A stretch of 63,879 nucleotides of DNA, the filler included, from Reticulomyxa filosa (lineage: Eukaryota > Protista > Foraminifera): assembly GCA_000512085.1 (NCBI GenBank). It is 18 parts of 18 records of this genome, joined end to end, with 100 filler letters (N's around TTAATTAATTAA, not from the genome) between each part and the next. Parts side by side here need not be neighbours in the genome. Positions count along the whole stretch, not along the records: positions 12,075 to 32,058 come from ASPP01009421.1; 17 more parts are not named here. One strand, 5' to 3'. The notes under the pieces are model-generated. The model searched no databases. It was given only the letters and a program-made list of their open reading frames with translations, and was not told where the DNA came from. Each line of letters starts with the position of its first letter. The stretch's first letter is position 1. Of this stretch, positions 13,343 to 27,285 are shown one piece after another. A program made the translations under genes and the position numbers.

Positions 13343-15512
13343 TTATCCCCAAATACGAATACTGTTAATTGAACCATAACATAATCCAAAATTATAATCG
13401 TTATTTTTATTTTTCATTTTTAACGATAAAAATTTAAAACATAATATTCCACCGTCTTCTTTATCTCCATTGATCACATACAATTCCTTCTTATTTGATC
13501 GAATATCCCAAAATCGAACTGTATTGTCAAATGATCCAGAACATATTACATTTGAACTATCACCAACTTCGATATTTTTTACTAAAAATGGTGTGTATTC
13601 GACAGAATACACTGTACTTGTATGTCCATTGAACACTTGAATTTGTTGACTAGATCGAATATCCCACAAACGAACGCTTTTATCATGTGATCCAGATAAT
13701 ATTGTATTTGCGCCACCACTATTTCCTAATTCATTTGATCCATATTTTACACTCCACACATTATCTTCATGTCCTTTGAATAAAATAAATTGTTTGATTG
13801 TTTCAATATCCCATATACTAATCATTTTATCGAATGATCCAGAACAAATTGTATACCCATTACCACCAATCACACCAATACTATTACTTTCATTGTTATT
13901 GCTTTGTAATGGTGAAAAACTCACACACAAGACACGATTTGTATGTCCATTGAAAACATGTAATGATTTAGATGTTTCAACATCCCATAAACAAATAGTT
14001 TTATCAAATGACCCAGAACACAAGTATTTACCACCATTAAATGGAGAAAATTCAATACCACTTGCTGCATCGGTATGTCCATTAAATATTTGCAATTGTT
14101 GATCATTTTTGATATCCCAAAAACATATTGTCTTGTCATGTGATGAAGAGCAAATGACGCCATGGCGATTATTATAATAATGATATGGAGAAAACTTTAC
14201 ACAATTTACTCCAGCTGAATGTACGTTGAATACTTGAGTCTGTTTGTTGGTGTCTATATCCCATACACGAACTGTTTTATCCGCTGATCCAGAACAAAGC
14301 AATCGATTACCATCAAATGTTGAATAATCAATACTACACACCCAACTTTTATGTCCTGTGAATGTTTTGATTAAGTTGGACGATAAGCGAAAAATATCAA
14401 AATTAGGCTTAGACGATTGTGTAAGCACAGTTGTTGAAAATGTATCTTTATTGTTATTTTCTTTATTTTCATCGTTAGTTTTTTCTCGATTTTCTCTTAC
14501 TTCATTGTCCTTTTTTAATATTATTTTATCTTTCAATTCTATGTCATGTTTTAATTTTTCAATTTCGTTGAGGAGCATTTTCTATTAAATTATATCGTGG
14601 GCTTGTAAAATTTCTAGATCACATTTGTAGGAGGGGAAAAAAAAAAAGCATACCTGATGATGATCTAAATTGAGAATATGTTGCTTAAAAATAGAGTTTT
14701 CATTTAGTACCTTTAATATTTCTTCATATTGTTTTTTTTATCCAAATCTATTTGCATCTTCAGCTGTTCATTTTCTAATTGCAATTGCTTTAATTCTTCC
14801 TATTTTGTTTCCAAGTCGTACTGTATTTGCAACGCTATTATTGATGGAAAAGCAGAAAAAGACTATCTATAACATCTCGCTGTAGGATGGTCTGTTGCAT
14901 CAATGCAACTTTCTTCGCTACTAAATCAAAATGATGTTTCATCTTTTCATTTAAATGAGTGTCCAATCCATGTCCAAGACATGAGTAATCACATCCAAAC
15001 GATTTGAACCAACACTCTGACAATTTTAATGTGCATGCGTTATCCAAGTGACCCTTTAAATCTTTTATTTTTCCTTTGAAGCTACATATCACTGCCGTAT
15101 TTCCATGTGTTTGTCCTTCTTCATTCCCTTCCAGTGTTTGCAAATCTTGTTGAAACTGTCTTGGACACATCACTATCAAATCATTAATTAGTCGTTGCAT
15201 TGGTTTCATTTTATAGTACTCACAGCCATCATGCGGTTGAACTGGACATGCGTGTGGATTGTTGTTAAGAAATTGTTTCAAACAATTCTCTCCTGCTATC
15301 AATGTTTCATCCATATTTTCGTGTTGCGGACAATTAATTTCAACTGGGCTGTTTGCAACTTGCTTACAAATTAAACAAATAAAATGATTGATCTGCTCGG
15401 ATGAGTTTAACCGTAAAACCCAGTTCTTATCAAAGCACGAATGTTCAAAAAAAAATGGAACAACTCCACTTTGATGTTTTTCGTTCATTGTCTCCTCTTT
15501 CATGTCACTCAT
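13343..15512 (-). CDS. RING/TRAF-type Zn finger, coiled coil and WD40-repeat protein
   Basis: CLICKQ..CPQH..GENCL..CPVQPH; TRAF-like CSFKGKIKDLKGHLDNAC; about 7 GH..WD repeats; two GT-AG introns; one A-run frameshift near 14735. Confidence 0.85.
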
Positions 15513-17852: not shown

Positions 17853-18034
17853 GGGAGGTGGCGCGATTAACGCAACCACCATTGAACACAAATTGAGTCG
17901 AATGCTAGTCCACTTGGGAAAAAGCAAAGTAGGTTCGCCCAACGTCTGATTTTCATCGAGTGCACAATTGGGACACAGTTCCTACTACCCAGGGGCCTTA
18001 ATTGATCACCCACTGAGTTCGACCAGGTATGTAA
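17853..18034 (-). ncRNA. U1: U1 snRNA with variant 5' end (UUACAUACCUGG)
   Basis: All U1 elements in order: ACAUACCUG 5'ss-pairing end (18032-18024); helix H GUCGAA/UUCGAC (18023-18018 with 17902-17897); SL1 with GAUCAAUUAAG loop; SL2 AGUAGG/CCUACU containing UGCAC; SL3 UGCU..UCC-CAAGU-GGA..AGCA; Sm site AAUUUGUG (17894-17887); SL4 GGUGG..GCG/CGC..CCACC. Confidence 0.92.
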
Positions 18035-19478
18035 GGAGATAGGAATGGTATATAGATAGTGTTCACCCAGAAAGTGAAAACATTAACCATAGTCGAATAT
18101 ATGCTATTTGCGAAAGCCAAGAACTTTCATCACACATCTTAAAAAAAGTCATTCTTTGGTGCAAAGAAATTCCATAATGACCTTCTCTGCTTTTTTTTTG
18201 GTGTGGATTGCAACTGGTTTTGGAAAAGTAGAAGCGAAGAAAAATACAAAGGTTACACACTTGTTTTGTCATGGACAAGCCCTTGGCGTTTGAATAAGCT
18301 ACAGGCTTCGGTTGCTTCGGATCAGTTTTAGTACATGTTTTTTGAGTGGTAAATAAAACGCTTTTGTTTCGATGGGGCCAATTTTTGTACAAAAAAAAAA
18401 CACAGAGTAAACAAATACAACCAATCACTATGTCTTATTACAGTTGTTTGTTGTTTGTTTTTCACACAGTCCACACCGTGTGATGCGAGGGTTTGTTGCT
18501 ACGTTTTTTCCAAGGCAATGGGCAATAGTTTGTGTTCTCTCGTGTTTGTAAATTTTGGGATATTGGAAGTGTTGTGTCAATGCCAGGGATAATCCAAAGC
18601 TCACAAACAATTTCAAACTAATTTTTAAAAATCCCCTAAAAATTGGCAGTTTTGGTGATTTTTTTTTTTTTTCGTTAGTTAGTTCAGTTTAGGTATCCTA
18701 ATTTGGGTTCAGCCTCAAAAAAAAAAAACAAAAAAAAACACACCATTTATGGTTTAGTTCAAATCGATGCAATAACATTGCTTGCTTTCGAATTTCTCGT
18801 CTTTTAAAAGCAACAAGACAGAAATTTTTATTAAACACTTTCACTTCATAAGCAAAACACTAACACAAAGGGGGAAGGAAAAAAACAATAATTAAAAAAA
18901 TTGAAAAGGATCATACGGCATAATTGTTTCTTATGTATACGTTTTGTATGCTGCAATCAACAAAGCCTTCCAACAGTCTTCCTTCCACGTCCCTTTTTAC
19001 ATTGCAAAACATTTTTAATGTTTTTGAAATTGTGTTATACGGATCTCAGATTCTCAAGTAAAAAATAAAAAATACACACCTTGTTTTGTGTGATTGGCAC
19101 TTATAAATACAATCCAAGATTTTGCTCAGAAATTTCTTCTGTTTGTCAAACAAGTTTATTCCATATTTTACTTGCAAAAAGAAAAACATCTTGGGTCATG
19201 TCTCATAAGAGCAGTATAATGTGGCCACAGATCAAGTTATTTTTTGGTGCATTATACATTTCAAACTTCTTGGGGACCAAAAAGAGAGCTTTTTGAAAAA
19301 GAAACGAGAATTAATTGTATACTTTGTGTAAGTAGTCTGTAACTTTTTTGTACATCTTCGTATTGTTCTAGGACAAATAAATTACAAATATGCATGGCTC
19401 ACTGTAAAATTTTTTGTCCTCAAAAGTCGGTTCTTTGACCCCCTTAAGGGGGAGGGATGTTCCTGAAGTTTTTTGAGG

Positions 19479-22400
19479 ATGCCCATCGCCCAAGATATTT
19501 TAAGAATATTGGATCACCAAAAGACAAGTTGTCGCATCCCTCGAGAATCAGACGAAGTTGAAAAGGATGAATGCATGTTATCTTTCGATAATCCCTTTTC
19601 GCCGGACGGACTGTACACAAACCTGAAATCATGGCAATCCTACGGTCGTGAATTTGTGGAAAAAGATTCAGAGAAGTCTCAGCATCAAATATACTTATTT
19701 CAAAAATTTTACAAAGTAGGATTTCCTTGACTTTTTTTTAATATCCCCCTCCCTCCTCCTCGTTCCAAAAAAAAAGGGGAGTTAAAACTTAAACTTTTTA
19801 ATCCCTCCAAAAAAAAAAAAAAAAACAACAACTCCAGCACCTCAAACCAGAAACAAAAGAAAGCAACGAGACAACAAAAACACCAAGCCTATTGGGCCTA
19901 GGTATTGAGAATGGATTTAGTGGGAACGACGACAGCATTGAATTAGAAAGGCAATATTTTATATGTGTGTTGCCAAGCTTTACTCTGGTGGAATTAACGG
20001 AAAAGGACTTGCCGACCCAAATTGCGGCAAGTGCACAAGCTATCATAGCCCACAAGGGCGCAGCAGCAAAGGCAACCGATATTTGGGTGCCCGATATCAA
20101 AGTATGAACAAAAAAATATTTTATTTTTTTTTTGCCACACTACGCATATTCGCAACAATAATAACCCATACATTTTTTTTTTTTTATATATACATATATG
20201 TATATTATATAAATATAAACATAAATAAAAGGAAAGCAAATACAGCAACAACCTTGTGCAATTGAAAGCGGGTAGTATTCGCGTGTCACCAAATCCGAAA
20301 GATTGGCAATGTGCGGAATGTGGCGAGACGAAGAACTTGTGGTTGAATTTATCAGACGCGTACGTTGGGTGCGGACGTCAACAGTTTGGTGGGTCGGGTG
20401 GCTGCGGTGCCTCGTTGCGACACTTTGAGCACACGGGACGAACGTACCCGCTGGCCGTGAAGCTGGGCACCATCACGACCGACGGCGCAGATGTGTTCAG
20501 CTACGAGGAAGACGACCTGGTCAAAGACTCGGCTCTGGCCCAACACTTGTCTCATTGGGGCATCGACATCATGAAACTGCAAAAGACGGACAAAACCATG
20601 GAAGAGTTAGACATTGATTTGAATAAGGGCTTCATTTTGGGATTTGTTCTTGAAACACGAAACTGCTTGGTATATTTGTGTTTTTTTTTGAGAGTTTTTG
20701 ATGATGAGTCCATTCGAAATGGACTACAATTTGCATGCGTGATCACTTTGAATTACATATTCGAAACAATAAAACATTAGCAACAAGTGAATGGACCCTC
20801 ACTCATTGGGTTAGAAAATTTGGGCAACACGTGCTATATGAACTCCTTGCTGCAGACTGTTTATACCATTCCGGAAATGCGAAACAAGTTTGGCAACGAG
20901 GAAAGGGGGAGGGGATCCCATTTGTTCATTGTATTGTTATTTGTTGTTGTTGTTAACAATATGTGCTTTTATTTGTTTTGGTTGATTGATTGATTGTTTG
21001 GTTGATGAAAAAAAAAAAAACAAGATACTTGGATAATGCAAGTGACATTTTGACAATGGCTCCGGAAAAACCGGAAAATGATCTGGCGACCCAAGCCACA
21101 AAGCTAGCGGTTGGACTGCTAACCGATCGCTACATTTTGCAATTGGAAAAGAACAATGCTCACGAGAAAGAGCGGATAGAGAAAATAATGCAGGATGTAC
21201 ACGAGACAAATACAGAGCCGACTAAACATAGAGTCGCCTTTGAACGCACTTGCTTGAGGCCACGGATGTGGAAGAAATTAGTCGGGGCTGAACATGGCGA
21301 GTTTTCTTCCAACCGTCAACAAGATGTTGTTGAATACATGCAGTTTCATACTATACACACACCCCACTTTTTTTTGTTGGTCTCTCTCTCAATGGAGCGT
21401 GAGTGCATATGTGTGGAACTGATAGACATATGTTTGAGCTGATCAGTCGTCGTGAGCGAGTTTGCACACGCATTGACAAATCAATTCCGACCTTGACCGA
21501 TTTGTTCCGATTTCAAGAAGAGGAAAGGCTGCAATGTTGTGCTTCACAAAAAGTTCGCTACTCCACATCCGACCACTTGGTATTGCGATTGCCTGTTGAC
21601 ATGGAAGATGCCATTCGTAAACATGATCCACAAAGCAATCAGGTCTCTAACACTTTGGCCACATATACATATACATGTATATGTTTATATGTATATGGAC
21701 GAGTGCTTGGATTTTGGAAATTAGGAAACGAACAAGACCACTTGTGCGCAAAATTATGTGACTACAAAGGTGGACTCATATGTATGTTAACAATTAAGTT
21801 TCTCTTTGTGTGATTCCTTTTTTACTATCTCTTGATCAATTAACTATACAATCTAAAAAAAAAGGAGAGACCATGTAAACGTCAACGGATTGAAAGTAAT
21901 GAAGAAACCAAAAACAGTAAAACGTCTTGTAACGAAGAAACAATGAAAGACGTGCCAACAAGCTTGCCGATAATTCCATTTGAAAAGTGCGTCGACCGCT
22001 ATATGCAACAATCGACAGCAGAAGATTGGCTGTCTCCAGTGACTGGAATTCGTGGGAAAGCAATCAAATCACATCGACTGTCCACTTTCCCAAAGTATTT
22101 GGCCATTCAAATATCTCGCTATTATCTCACCGAGCAATGGCTGCCCGAAAAACACAATGTCGAGGTCCCTGTGCCCACAGAGCTTGATCTCGAATGTATG
22201 CGAGCAAAGGGGGCGCAACAGGACGAAGAGTTGATGGCAGACACAACCTCAAAAGAAGACAATGATACATCATTACCGACACCTGATCCTACTGCTGTCA
22301 ATGCATTGCTATCCATGGGCATGGGGTTCACTGAAAACGCGTGCAAACGAGCAGCTCTCGCTGTTTCAAATGGTAGTACTGAATTGGCTGCTGCTTGGCT

Positions 22401-22881
22401 GGTTGAACATATTGGTGATGAAGACCTCAATGATCCATTGCCAAAAGCGGATACCAGCACCAGCAATTTGGTGACATTGGATGAATCAACAGTCGAAATG
22501 TTGTGTCAAAATTTGGGATTTGATCGTGAGTCAGTGGAGGTGGCGCTGCAACATACCAATGGGGACTCGGGTAGAGCTGCAGATTGGCTTTTTTCTCATA
22601 TGGATAACTTGCAAGAAAGTATTTCGACTATTAAAGCACAACAAACCAATAAAAAAGATACACAAAACTCAAAGTATACAAACGGAATTGCAAAATATAA
22701 AATGTTTGCATTTATTTCACACTTGGGGAAAGCCACAAGCCATGGCCATTACGTTGTTCACATCAAAAAGGGATCTCAATGGTATATTTTCAATGACAAC
22801 TATGTTGCCAAATCTCAGGAACCTCCATTCAGTCATGGTTATCTATACTTTTTTGAAAGAGACTCACAACAATCCACATAA
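19479..22881 (+). CDS. USP5: Ubiquitin C-terminal hydrolase 5/13 (isopeptidase T)
   Basis: KDEC..SFD N-domain; ZnF-UBP (NLWLNLSDAYVGCGR, YPLAVKLGTIT, DVFSYEED); Cys box LENLGNTCYMNS; two UBA domains; His box HLGKATSHGHYV..FND. Introns 19716-19837, 20102-20231, 20629-20694, 20733-20780, 20888-21024, 21343-21425, 21643-21724, 21770-21864. Confidence 0.95.
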
Positions 22882-24589: not shown

Positions 24590-27285
24590 TTATTTTTGTT
24601 TAAGTTTTTGATTTAGTATTTCTTGGGATCGTTCTGGAACATTTGTTTTTTTAATGTCTTTTTTAAATTTATTATTGTCCGTGGAACCGTTGGACAACTG
24701 ACTAGAGGAGCCAAGAGTTGGGGTTGGCGTGGAACTACCCGAGTTGGCGTTGTTAGAAGATTGAGATTGCATCTCCAATTTGGATTTGGAAATGCGCTTT
24801 TGTGTTCGAACATTCTTTTGTTGTTTATGTGTCGTTTCCCAATGTTCCAAATTGAGTTGCATAACTTGGGACCAAGGTTTCAATTCCGGGATGATGTCAC
24901 AAAAAACTTCAAATATCGGAGCAACAATAAAGCGGATAAAGCCAATTTGCCCACTGGCCAAACTAGCCGTTTCCTTGTCCATCATTGGTGACACTGGCAA
25001 GCCTAGGGCTTTTTCCTTGTCTCCCTGATTGAAAAATTCTTGCATAATGCGATCTGCCCATTGAGTACAAGCTTTCAGTTCTTTAGTTGGGTTGGATACG
25101 TCGCATATGTGGATCGCCGCGCCGAGGATAAACAACCTCTCATCTTCTACACCATTAACACGGGAGCTTTCAGTTTCCACTTGTTTTTCTGGAATCAGTA
25201 CACTGGTTAGCTCTTCATTCTTTATTGCTATTTCCGTACATATAAAAATAAATAAATAAATATATTTATATGTGTACGTATTTTTGATAAAATTTTTTTT
25301 TTTTTTTATAAAAAAAAAGCAATATAACCAGTGTGAGCCAAGTTGTAATTTGCCTTTGACTTTTCCAAAGGGATGGTTGAAAAAGAAGAGACCGGGGAAG
25401 TGGGGGAGACGTCCAATTCTATGTTGCTCCTTTCGGACATTGGTGTTACAATGTCACTGGTTTCTTGAGAAGGGGTTGTATTCAATTTGTCGCCATTCGA
25501 CTGGACACTGCTCGTTTTCGATTTTGTCTCTTGTCTGTAAACAAAGCGAGGTCATTTTTATGTACATTTCATAACTTTTTTTTTTTTTTTTTGTTAAAAA
25601 AGGTCCCTCACCTCTCATCACTCTTTTTTTTTTAAAAAAATACATCTTGCACTGAAGTGAATGTATGTGTATAAAGATTGAAGTAGAAAACTTAAAAGCG
25701 GCCAACATCGCCCGCAGACGTGCGAGTTCTTGGAAATGGAAATGCATGTCGGTGGCCAACACCAATTGAATGATGACGTTTCGGAAATAGTTTTGAATGG
25801 GTCGACTGAGCTTGTGATACCAGTTGTTGTTGCTTTTCTTAAGCAAAAAGAACGCGCGACTAATGTGATAATTTTCTAAAACGCTGCTGTCGTTATACGT
25901 CAAAGCAATGTCACTACCACTGCTCATATGAAAGGCATTGTTGTATCCATCATGGCCTAAATCATGCACACATGCGGCAATGATCGCCGCCATTTGATCA
26001 AGCTTGGACAAATGGTTTTGCATAAACTCGGATTTCAATACAAAGAACAAGGTATTGGTCACATCCAACGCATGTAACTTGTTGTGATACGGAATATTGT
26101 TGTAATTCATCTCCACATCGCGCAAGAAATTCCACAGTTTGCGATGCGATATGTCTAACGATCGAACCATGTCCAATTGCATCAATATGTGATGTGTGGC
26201 CAATACTAGGCATTGTTCTTTGCATACGTCAATATCATACATTTCAAATACATTAAAGTCCCATTCACCTTTTATTCAATCAAAGTGTTTGTGATGAAGA
26301 AGTGGACATATTTAATATATAAATATGGATTATATATGTACATATACATATATATGTATGTATGTATTTATATGTTCTGATTATTTATAGAAATTAATCT
26401 TGCTTTTTTTTTTTTTTTTTTTTTTTTGTCATACCAATTTTTGCCAAACAATTCTTCAATTGTTCATTATGACTTAATAACGAAATGGTTGAATTGAGTT
26501 GGTTTTTGAATGATCAATGCAACCATAACTCGTCTTGCACAGCGCCGAAGTCTTTGTACACCCGATAGCTTCTGTCTTACGTATGCGTGTTCGCTGCCGC
26601 CTTCGTCTCCACTCCCTTCTTCCGACCTGTCCTTCGTCTTGTTCACTATATCGTCCACCGTTGCTTTTGGTAGGAAATTGTTCACCAACCACAACGCGGT
26701 TTCGCGCGTGTCAAAGTCATCGCTGTCTTGGAATTCTGTCTTGTGCTCGTTCTTTGTCACCACCATCGATTCTAATGCTCTTGTCGTCTCCACCCGCATT
26801 TTTTCCGATTTGGCTTTTATACTGGTTTTTTTTAATCGTTGTTTCAATATTGTATACTCTGTTGCCCATACGTCATTCAACGCTACGCGCATGTCATTCT
26901 TTTTTTTTTTTTTTTTTGTTATACGTCTTTAATCAAATATTTTTTCTTTTTTTTTTTAAAAAAAAGGGGGACGAATCTCCTTTGAATGTTTAATTTTTTT
27001 TTTTGAAGAGACCTGCAATTTTTGGTCTTTGCCGACCACAGTTTCCAATCGGCTTATAATGTCGCTTTTCATCTTTTTCAAGAGCTCCAAATCACTCAGT
27101 TGTTGGAGTTTTGAACGGTCGGTGCTGCAACGGGTCAACTGTCTTGTCGCTGACGGCCTTATGTTCGCCTCACCTTTGGCTCTGGTCCCGTTCTTACCCT
27201 TCAAAAACGAAAAGAAGCGTGAATTGCTCACACCACTATTGGGCAATCGGATTGACATTTTTTCGTCATCTTTCGTAGTGGTCAT
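24590..27285 (-). CDS. Class I 3',5'-cyclic nucleotide phosphodiesterase
   Basis: WDFNVF, YHNKLHALDV, HDLGHDGYNNAF, SVLENYH, LATDM, HICDVSNPTK, EFFNQGDKEK, QIGFI; four GT-AG introns; one A-run frameshift near 26505; true start uncertain. Confidence 0.92.

What the first reader, a model, noticed from the sequence alone, without database searches (positions are those of the whole stretch)
17853..18034. U1 snRNA with a rewritten 5' splice-site recognition sequence (ACAUACCUG)
Seen: a full U1 architecture (helix H, SL1 GAUCA loop, SL2 UGCAC, SL3, Sm site AAUUUGUG, SL4) in an intergenic island, with stems intact. Its 5' end reads UUACAUACCUGG. Established: U1 nt 3-11 are ACUUACCUG in nearly all eukaryotes, and nt 5 (normally pseudouridine) faces intron +4. 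Budding yeast keeps U5 even though its donors are GUAUGU. Inference: A5 makes this U1 perfectly complementary to CAG|GUAUGU. It may be a natural compensatory U1, either the main U1 of this lineage or one of several donor-specific variants.
Basis: partly seen in the sequence, partly recalled or inferred. Interest (0 to 1): 0.92.

Follow-up and report, generated by a model that had tools for sequence, protein, structure and literature searches.

The report
Variant U1 snRNA gene in a foraminiferan
This is a real U1 spliceosomal RNA gene of the foraminiferan Reticulomyxa filosa in which one letter of the normally invariant intron-start-recognition sequence is changed (ACAUACCUG instead of ACUUACCUG); the genome also keeps canonical U1 genes, and the change does not match the commonest intron starts I could verify.

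Summary
Observation confirmed. Window 17853-18034 (minus strand) is a full-length U1 snRNA gene. It has helix H, SL1-SL4, an Sm site and the 70K/U1A-type loops, and its 5' end reads UUACAUACCUGG. The genome is Reticulomyxa filosa. It holds six U1 genes. Four carry A at nt 5, in two diverged subtypes. Two carry the canonical ACUUACCUG. Stems covary between copies. Conservation stops at the RNA borders. A GTGTGA box sits at -101, as in the U2 genes. So this is a working gene family, not a sequencing error or a single decayed copy.

A5 would pair with +4U (GUAUGN). But 35 homology-verified donors (actin, alpha-tubulin, UCH-L, USP5-like) mostly read GUUAAN or GUUUNN. At +3 they have U 27, A 7, G 1. 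At +4 they have A 19, U 11, G 3, C 2. GUAUG occurs 3 times. U6 ACAGAGA is unchanged and a METTL16-family gene is present. Consensus-level compensation does not fit.

ACAUAC U1 is already reported in Physarum, also alongside standard copies. I also found it in uncultured eukaryotes. No reads were available, so expression is untested.

The parts
17853..18034 (-). U1 snRNA gene, subtype A of the A5 class, about 180 nt
   Evidence: Rfam RF00003 matches over the full model: 47.8 bits, E 7.8e-11. The genome's own model R1 gives 183 bits at G000:C9421:5779-5960. The MFE fold shows a four-way junction plus SL4.
18024..18032 (-). 5' splice-site recognition sequence, nt 3-11 = ACAUACCUG. A5 is at 18030, where other eukaryotes have U/pseudouridine.
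   Evidence: Sequence read directly. The same change is present in C2366, C22512 and C20079. C4815 and C23977 read ACTTACCTGG.
17997..18007 (-). SL1 loop GAUCAAUUAAG, the counterpart of the U1-70K-binding loop
   Evidence: GATCAA is invariant in all six copies. It aligns to the GAUCAaGAAG of the Rfam consensus.
17960..17964 (-). SL2 loop UGCAC, the U1A-type loop core
   Evidence: TGCACTC is invariant in the five aligned copies.
17886..17894 (-). Sm site AAUUUGUGU, single-stranded between helix H and SL4
   Evidence: Aligned to the Rfam AAUUUgUGg. It is unpaired in the MFE and consensus folds.
17857..17880 (-). 3' stem-loop SL4
   Evidence: Helix 8 of the consensus structure is 87% paired across copies and has two pairs with double changes.
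18130..18135 (-). Upstream GTGTGA box at -101, a candidate proximal-sequence element of an snRNA promoter
   Evidence: A GTGTGA-like box lies at -98 to -103 in 7 of 8 U2 genes, at -56 to -59 in U6 genes, and at -96 in U1 copy C2366. Its function is inferred, not shown.
18041..18046 (-). ATTCCT motif at about -12 to -7, shared by U1 copies of subtypes A and C
   Evidence: Seen in the alignment of flanks. Its function is unknown.

Best explanation
The locus is a functional gene for a U1 snRNA isoform of Reticulomyxa filosa. The only change in its splice-site-recognition sequence is U5 to A. The genome keeps two classes of U1: an A5 class (four genes, subtypes A and B) and a canonical U5 class (two genes).

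Mechanistically, nt 5 faces intron position +4 in the standard U1:5'ss helix. The A5 class therefore adds a Watson-Crick pair at donors with +4U (GUAUGN, GUUUNN; about a third of verified donors). The U5 class does the same at +4A donors (GUUAAN, GUAAGN; about half). A5 is thus best read as one of two co-resident donor-recognition variants. It is not a rewrite that matches the lineage's consensus donor.

What is shown: the gene, its copies, their covariation, and the donor statistics. What is inferred: expression, the promoter element, and any division of labour between the two classes.
For: U1 identity and architecture are supported. Whole-genome searches found six U1 loci, four reading ACATACCTGG and two reading ACTTACCTGG. 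This came from a pattern search and from a model built on this genome's own copies.

Selection on the RNA is indicated in three ways. First, 84% of cells are paired and 18 pairs have changes on both sides, against 8.5 +/- 2.0 in shuffles (0/500) and 5-9 in slid controls. Second, the window copy and C2366 are 87% identical in the RNA but 62% in the flanks, which equals the unrelated baseline of 58%. Third, A5 is kept across subtypes A and B, which are only about 74% identical.

A promoter-like GTGTGA box sits at -101, the same distance as in the U2 genes.

Both +4U and +4A donors exist: +4 is A 19, U 11, G 3, C 2 in 35 verified donors. At one conserved tubulin intron position, paralogues carry GTATGT and GTAAGT.

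There is precedent. Physarum has ACAUAC U1 together with standard copies. Environmental U1 genes with ACAUACCUG score above the Rfam gathering score and lie inside 5S-U1-U2-U5-U4 clusters.
Against: There is no expression data for any of the six loci. The donor sample is small. It is dominated by two conserved intron positions in two multigene families, so genome-wide frequencies are not established. Most verified donors have +3U, which mismatches U6 of both U1 classes. Pairing is therefore weak overall (mean about 4 of 9 pairs), and nt 5 may matter little. No test links either U1 class to a donor class.
Confidence: 0.55

Rival explanations
1. Relaxed constraint. R. filosa donors carry little information beyond GU, so pairing at nt 5 is nearly neutral. 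A5 is a tolerated variant that drifted to high copy number without matching any donor class.
For: Verified donors are degenerate after GU: +3 U 27/35, and +4 to +6 are mostly A/U. Mean complementarity to either U1 class is low, about 4 of 9. Neither AGGTATGT (1956 copies) nor AGGTAAGT (1289) reaches the composition expectation of about 3960 copies.
Against: Every other position of nt 3-12 is invariant in all six copies, and only nt 5 differs. A5 is retained in two subtypes that differ at about a quarter of positions. The same single substitution recurs in Physarum and in unrelated environmental U1 genes, which drift would not easily produce. Even the B. natans nucleomorph, whose introns lack a 5' motif, keeps the canonical U1 motif (PMC6461891).
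Confidence: 0.2
2. Full compensation. The A5 class is the main U1, and GUAUGU-like donors dominate genome-wide. On this view my verified sample (actin, tubulin, two other genes) is unrepresentative.
For: A5 genes outnumber canonical ones 4 to 2 and score higher against Rfam U1 (47.8-37.3 against 30.5 bits). GTATGA recurs among donors predicted from open-frame junctions in ordinary genes, including two in the window. AGGTATGT is 1.5 times as frequent as AGGTAAGT.
Against: GUAUG occurs in only 3 of 35 verified donors. UCH-L and two USP5-like introns, from ordinary single genes, start GTTATA, GTTTGG and GTTTCA. AGGTATGT occurs 1956 times, against about 80,000 introns implied by 2 introns per gene (PMC13746701), and is below composition expectation. 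U6 ACAGAGA is canonical and a METTL16-family gene is present. In yeasts METTL16 presence goes with +4A preference. Canonical U1 genes are retained.
Confidence: 0.12
3. The A5 loci are variant or pseudogene copies with little or no expression, like many human variant U1 loci. The two canonical genes supply the working U1.
For: No expression evidence exists for any locus. All copies score below the Rfam gathering score. Subtype B has its GTGAAA box at -61 rather than about -100.
Against: Compensatory stem changes between subtypes, and conservation confined to the RNA, point to selection on the folded RNA. All protein-binding loops and the Sm site are intact. The window copy has the U2-like GTGTGA box at -101. 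The canonical copies are the more divergent from U1 consensus (30.5 bits; 78.6 and 131 bits against 176-185 with R1, although R1 was trained mostly on A5 copies).
Confidence: 0.08

Closest known systems
Physarum polycephalum U1 snRNA with ACAUAC (as described in Roy & Bowser, bioRxiv 10.1101/2022.06.08.495308)
   Same: The recognition hexamer is changed in the same way, ACUUAC to ACAUAC. According to that preprint, standard and modified U1 variants coexist in the same genome. This is exactly the situation found here.
   Different: Physarum is an amoebozoan and R. filosa is a rhizarian, so the two cases probably arose independently. In Physarum the commonest donor is reported to be GUAUGU, so the change is complementary to the consensus. 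In R. filosa the verified donors are mostly GUUAAN or GUUUNN, and GUAUG is a minority.
Entamoeba U1 (ACAAAC) and Mastigamoeba U1 (ACGUAC), co-evolved with GUUUGU and GUGCGC donors (same preprint)
   Same: These are natural substitutions in the U1 nucleotides that face +3 and +4. Entamoeba donors, like most R. filosa donors, have U at +3.
   Different: In Entamoeba a single U1 type matches a nearly universal donor at both +3 and +4. In R. filosa only nt 5 changed, nt 6 still mismatches the prevalent +3U, and canonical U1 genes persist.
Canonical U1 snRNA (Rfam RF00003) of yeasts, Giardia and Trichomonas, which have GUAUGU donors
   Same: They have the same RNA family and architecture. These lineages show that +4U donors can be served by U1.
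   Different: Those lineages keep ACUUAC despite +4U. It was invariant in 236 species in PMC10581693 and in 69-70 yeasts in the preprint. R. filosa has the A5 change that those studies looked for and did not find.
Human variant U1 (vU1) genes and shifted or bulged U1:5'ss registers (PMC4856993)
   Same: Several U1 genes with different 5' ends sit in one genome. Donors such as GUUAAGU pair with canonical U1 only in a register shifted by one nucleotide. In that register the tubulin donors reach up to 8 of 9 pairs.
   Different: vU1 copies are minor and mostly poorly expressed. Here the variant class is the larger one. No functional data exist for R. filosa.

Membership tests
U1 spliceosomal RNA (Rfam RF00003) | Covariance-model match over the whole model at or above the curated gathering score | tested here: inconclusive
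   The match covers the full model (1-166) with E 7.8e-11, but 47.8 bits is below the gathering score of 69.5. All six R. filosa copies fall below it.
U1 spliceosomal RNA (Rfam RF00003) | 5' single-stranded ACUUACCUG that pairs with the donor site | tested here: met
   Eight of nine positions are identical. The only difference is A at nt 5. The segment is unpaired up to nt 9 in the consensus fold.
U1 spliceosomal RNA (Rfam RF00003) | Four-way junction (helix H, SL1, SL2, SL3) followed by an Sm site and SL4, supported by covariation | tested here: met
   The consensus structure has 49 pairs, 84% paired, and 18 pairs with double changes against 8.5 in shuffles (0/500). The single-sequence MFE gives the same layout. 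One caveat: the structure was derived from the same five sequences.
U1 spliceosomal RNA (Rfam RF00003) | Protein-binding loops (70K loop in SL1, U1A loop AUUGCAC in SL2) and Sm site AAUUUNUGG | tested here: met
   GAUCAA, UGCACUC and AAU(U/A)U(G/U)UG are conserved in all aligned copies. Binding itself was not tested.
U1 spliceosomal RNA (Rfam RF00003) | Expressed, TMG-capped, Sm-bound RNA | not testable with these tools
Co-evolved (compensatory) U1, as in Entamoeba, Mastigamoeba and Physarum | The substituted U1 nucleotide restores Watson-Crick pairing with the lineage's predominant donor nucleotide | tested here: not met
   Position +4, which faces nt 5, is A 19, U 11, G 3, C 2 in 35 verified donors, and GUAUG occurs 3 times. 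The sample is small and family-biased, so the result is provisional.
Co-evolved (compensatory) U1, as in Entamoeba, Mastigamoeba and Physarum | The modified U1 is the only or main U1 of the genome | tested here: inconclusive
   There are four A5 genes against two canonical genes. Expression levels are unknown.

The most novel reading that the evidence does not exclude
R. filosa, and perhaps foraminifera generally, may run a natural multi-U1 system in which co-resident U1 classes with different recognition sequences divide the donors between them. A5 would take +4U donors and U5 would take +4A donors. A probably related marine lineage may have gone further. The metagenome contig L090 carries, next to an A5 U1, a second U1 whose 5' end ACUUAACUUG is a perfect 10-bp complement of CAA|GUUAAGU. 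That is the unusual +3U donor type seen in R. filosa actin and tubulin introns.
Probability: 0.3. Interest if true: 0.8.

Novelty: new member of a known kind. Interest (0 to 1): 0.58.

Why it matters
The U1 recognition sequence is among the most conserved RNA motifs in eukaryotes. Two recent studies searched hundreds of genomes with +4U donors for exactly the U5-to-A change and found none. Only Physarum, Entamoeba and Mastigamoeba are on record with altered U1 5' ends. A rhizarian genome with four A5 genes beside two canonical ones adds an independent lineage. It gives a natural system in which to ask whether U1 isoforms partition donor sites or whether nt 5 is simply dispensable when donors are degenerate. 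The accompanying finding that verified R. filosa introns mostly begin GUU, a pyrimidine at +3, is itself unusual. It makes this organism useful for studying how 5' splice sites are chosen when U1 pairing is weak.

Tried and rejected
**Reads.** The look-up of sequencing runs found one non-RNA run with a 0.07 share. The Pfam query began at 20238, and the places were masked with N in the local BLAST. Earlier local scripts had read the piece as a whole and printed a few bases around a predicted acceptor there.

**More genome sequence.** Later searches returned no loci. The look-up of encoding contigs leaves this genome out. The donor survey is therefore limited to about 232 kb.

**De novo intron finding.** Joining open frames with EM was rejected as evidence. 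It converged on the actin/tubulin motif and on poly-A acceptors, and it favours donors that contain stop codons.

**Junction peptides against paralogue ORFs** were too noisy.

**USP5 references** at 30-40% identity resolved only 2 of 5 junctions.

**Genome-wide 8-mer counts** show no enrichment of either perfect consensus. They are dominated by background.

**A CUUAAC-type U1 in R. filosa.** I searched for a counterpart of L090b and found only chance matches.

**Literature and earlier findings.** The R. filosa genome paper is not held.

**Sequencing error or contamination.** I rejected both. There are four loci, and the contig GC of 35.2% equals the genome mean.

Full report
**What is there**

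The minus strand of window 17853-18034 reads UUACAUACCUGGUCGAAC.... No Rfam family reaches its gathering score in the 20-kb piece. At the E-value threshold, U1 (RF00003) aligns over its whole length, model positions 1-166, at 17855-18034. The score is 47.8 bits and E is 7.8e-11, against a gathering score of 69.5.
- the SL1 loop GAUCAAUUAAG
- the SL2 loop UGCAC
- the Sm site AAUUUGUGU
- a 3' stem-loop

The single-sequence fold gives a four-way junction plus SL4, with z = -2.06. The gene is a 48% GC island in AT-rich spacer.

**Organism**

An actin exon from the same assembly is 99% identical to RFI_15712 of Reticulomyxa filosa. The assembly statistics, 101.9 Mb in 50,809 contigs, are those published for that species (PMC10245619).

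**How many U1 genes, and which 5' ends**

Rfam U1 finds five loci in the genome. A pattern search for ACWTACCTGGT-N8-16-GATCAA finds six, with no hits in the reversed control. A covariance model built from the five copies finds the same six and no more among the candidates it scored.

Four loci read ACATACCTGG:
- subtype A: this locus and C2366, 87% identical to each other
- subtype B: C22512 and C20079, near-identical including their flanks

Two loci read the canonical ACTTACCTGG (C4815 and C23977). Positions 3-4 and 6-12 are invariant in all copies, and only nt 5 differs. A5 is therefore not an assembly error. It is also not the only U1 5' end in this genome.

**Are the A5 copies working genes?**

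Three lines of evidence say probably yes.
1. On the consensus structure, 84% of cells pair. Eighteen of 49 pairs show changes on both sides, against 8.5 +/- 2.0 in shuffles (0/500) and 5-9 when partners are slid. The caveat is that the structure was derived from the same five sequences.
2. Between this locus and C2366 the RNA is 87% identical. The 150 nt upstream are 62% identical, which is the level of unrelated upstream regions (58%).
3. A GTGTGA box lies at -101 here and at -96 in C2366. The same box lies at -98 to -103 in 7 of 8 U2 genes and at -56 to -59 in U6 genes. This is the pattern expected of a proximal snRNA promoter element at Pol II and Pol III spacings. That reading is an inference.

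Expression itself could not be tested.

**Does A5 match the donors?**

In the standard helix, nt 5 faces +4, so A5 would pair with +4U.

I located introns by spliced alignment of external reference proteins. Most references were metatranscriptome-derived actins and alpha-tubulins. R. filosa's own gene models were excluded. Pfam profile coordinates placed a UCH-L gene intron. Distant USP5 homologues placed two introns of the USP5-like gene in the window.

Thirty-five donors passed. They come from four genes or gene families. About 28 of them sit at two conserved positions: actin FYN|ELR and tubulin NLA|VD. Their composition is:

| Position | A | C | G | U |
|---|---|---|---|---|
| +3 | 7 | 0 | 1 | 27 |
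| +4 | 19 | 2 | 3 | 11 |
| +5 | 20 | 3 | 8 | 4 |

Typical donors are GUUAAG, GUUAAA, GUUUAA, GUUAUA and GUUUGG. GUAUG occurs three times. At one tubulin intron position, two paralogues have GUAUGU and GUAAGU.

For the first 33 donors, mean Watson-Crick pairs with nt 3-11 are as follows:

| Register | A5 | U5 |
|---|---|---|
| standard | 3.91 | 4.21 |
| shifted by one | 4.24 | 4.73 |

Donors predicted only from open-frame junctions in other genes include GUAUGA twice in the window, plus GUAGGA, GUAAUG, GUAAUU, GUAAAA and GUUAUA.

Genome-wide, AGGTATGT occurs 1956 times and AGGTAAGT 1289 times. Both are below the roughly 3960 expected from base composition. The genome has about 80,000 introns, from 2 introns per gene with a mean length of 87 bp (PMC13746701).

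U6 keeps ACAGAGA in all copies. A METTL16-family gene is present (PF05971, 144 bits, 501-codon open frame). In yeasts the presence of METTL16 goes with +4A preference (PMC10581693).

Together these results argue against a GUAUGU consensus. They therefore argue against consensus-level compensation. They are compatible with +4U and +4A donors each being served by one U1 class. The sample is small and family-biased, so this remains provisional.

**Comparison with what is known**

PMC10581693 explicitly proposed a pseudouridine-to-adenosine change at U1 nt 5 as the possible compensation for +4U. It found ACUUACC invariant in 236 species.

Roy and Bowser (bioRxiv 10.1101/2022.06.08.495308) found the canonical sequence in 69-70 yeasts, Thecamonas and Mamiellales. 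They described altered U1s in Entamoeba (ACAAAC, donors GUUUGU) and Mastigamoeba (ACGUAC). They also noted that Physarum has ACAUAC with GUAUGU donors, and that both standard and modified U1 variants exist there.

R. filosa thus repeats the Physarum pattern in a different supergroup. The difference is that its verified donors do not centre on GUAUGU. I found no report of a foraminiferal or rhizarian nuclear U1 5' end.

**Other occurrences**

A metagenome scan for ACATACCTGGT-N10-14-GATCAA gave mostly chance hits. Five contigs, however, carry true U1 genes with A5. Four of them (L099, L113, L163, L193) lie in 5S-U1-U2-U5-U4 clusters, and three of these U1 genes score 77.6-90.4 bits, above the Rfam gathering score. 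The fifth, the marine contig L090, has an A5 U1 that resembles R. filosa subtype A. Beside it is a second U1 beginning ACUUAACUUG, a perfect complement of CAA|GUUAAGU. No such variant was found in R. filosa. The source organisms are unknown.

**Verdict**

This is a natural U1 variant that belongs to the majority class of a two-class U1 repertoire. On present evidence it is not a rewrite matched to the lineage's consensus donor.

It is a new member of a known but very rare kind. Expression data and a transcript-based donor table would decide between three readings: division of labour, neutral tolerance, and silent variant copies.

Noticed in passing
L008, L010, L013, L022, L042-L064 (actin and alpha-tubulin loci); L022:3361; window 20888 and 21343: Verified R. 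filosa introns mostly start GUU: +3 is U in 27 of 35, for example CAA|GUUAAU and GCA|GUUAAG. A pyrimidine at +3 is rare in eukaryotes. These donors fit canonical U1 best in a register shifted by one nucleotide.
   Followed up: partly
L090:301-475 (-) and L090:671-838 (-): A marine metagenome contig carries two tandem U1 genes. One is ACAUACCUGG and resembles R. filosa subtype A. The other begins ACUUAACUUG, a perfect 10-bp complement of CAA|GUUAAGU. This looks like a second kind of rewritten U1. The organism is unknown.
   Followed up: partly
L113:1-2746; L099, L163, L193: Environmental contigs carry repeating 5S rRNA-U1-U2-U5-U4 gene clusters whose U1 has A5. In L099, L113 and L193 the U1 scores 77.6-90.4 bits, above the Rfam gathering score. 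The taxon is not identified.
   Followed up: partly
G000:C4815:2077-2267 and G000:C23977:1622-1814: Two canonical-5'-end U1 genes diverge strongly from the A5 copies in SL1-SL4 (about 67% identity) but keep the loops and the Sm site. The sequence of C23977 beyond its first 30 nt could not be read.
   Followed up: partly
window 19467-22878 (+): A six-exon USP5-like deubiquitinase gene (zf-UBP_var, zf-UBP, UCH, two UBA domains). The public gene model that matches it (P0361, 564 aa) covers only the 3' part.
   Followed up: partly
window 13343-15512 (-): A zf-TRAF open frame lies upstream of a 411-codon WD40 open frame. Together they may form one TRAF7-like gene with an intron of about 290 nt (candidate donor GTTATA). 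The WD40 part belongs to a very large R. filosa paralogue family.
   Followed up: no
window 24593-26275 (-): A cyclic-nucleotide phosphodiesterase gene is split between two open frames. The intron or insert between PDEase_I profile positions 136 and 143 was not resolved.
   Followed up: no
G000:C7441:3019-3981 (-): A METTL16-family methyltransferase domain (PF05971, 144 bits) in a 501-codon open frame. This suggests that U6 m6A may be retained.
   Followed up: no
L076-L083 (U2 loci): The U2 genes come in two lengths by the Rfam match (about 249 nt and about 203 nt) with different 3' parts. Both have the GTGTGA box near -100.
   Followed up: no
(whole genome): There are more than 100 actin and more than 160 tubulin matches. 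Many contain in-frame stops or are truncated, which points to extensive paralogy and pseudogenes.
   Followed up: no
They lie at the 3' end of intron 2 and the start of exon 3 of the USP5-like gene. I worked beside them.
   Followed up: no
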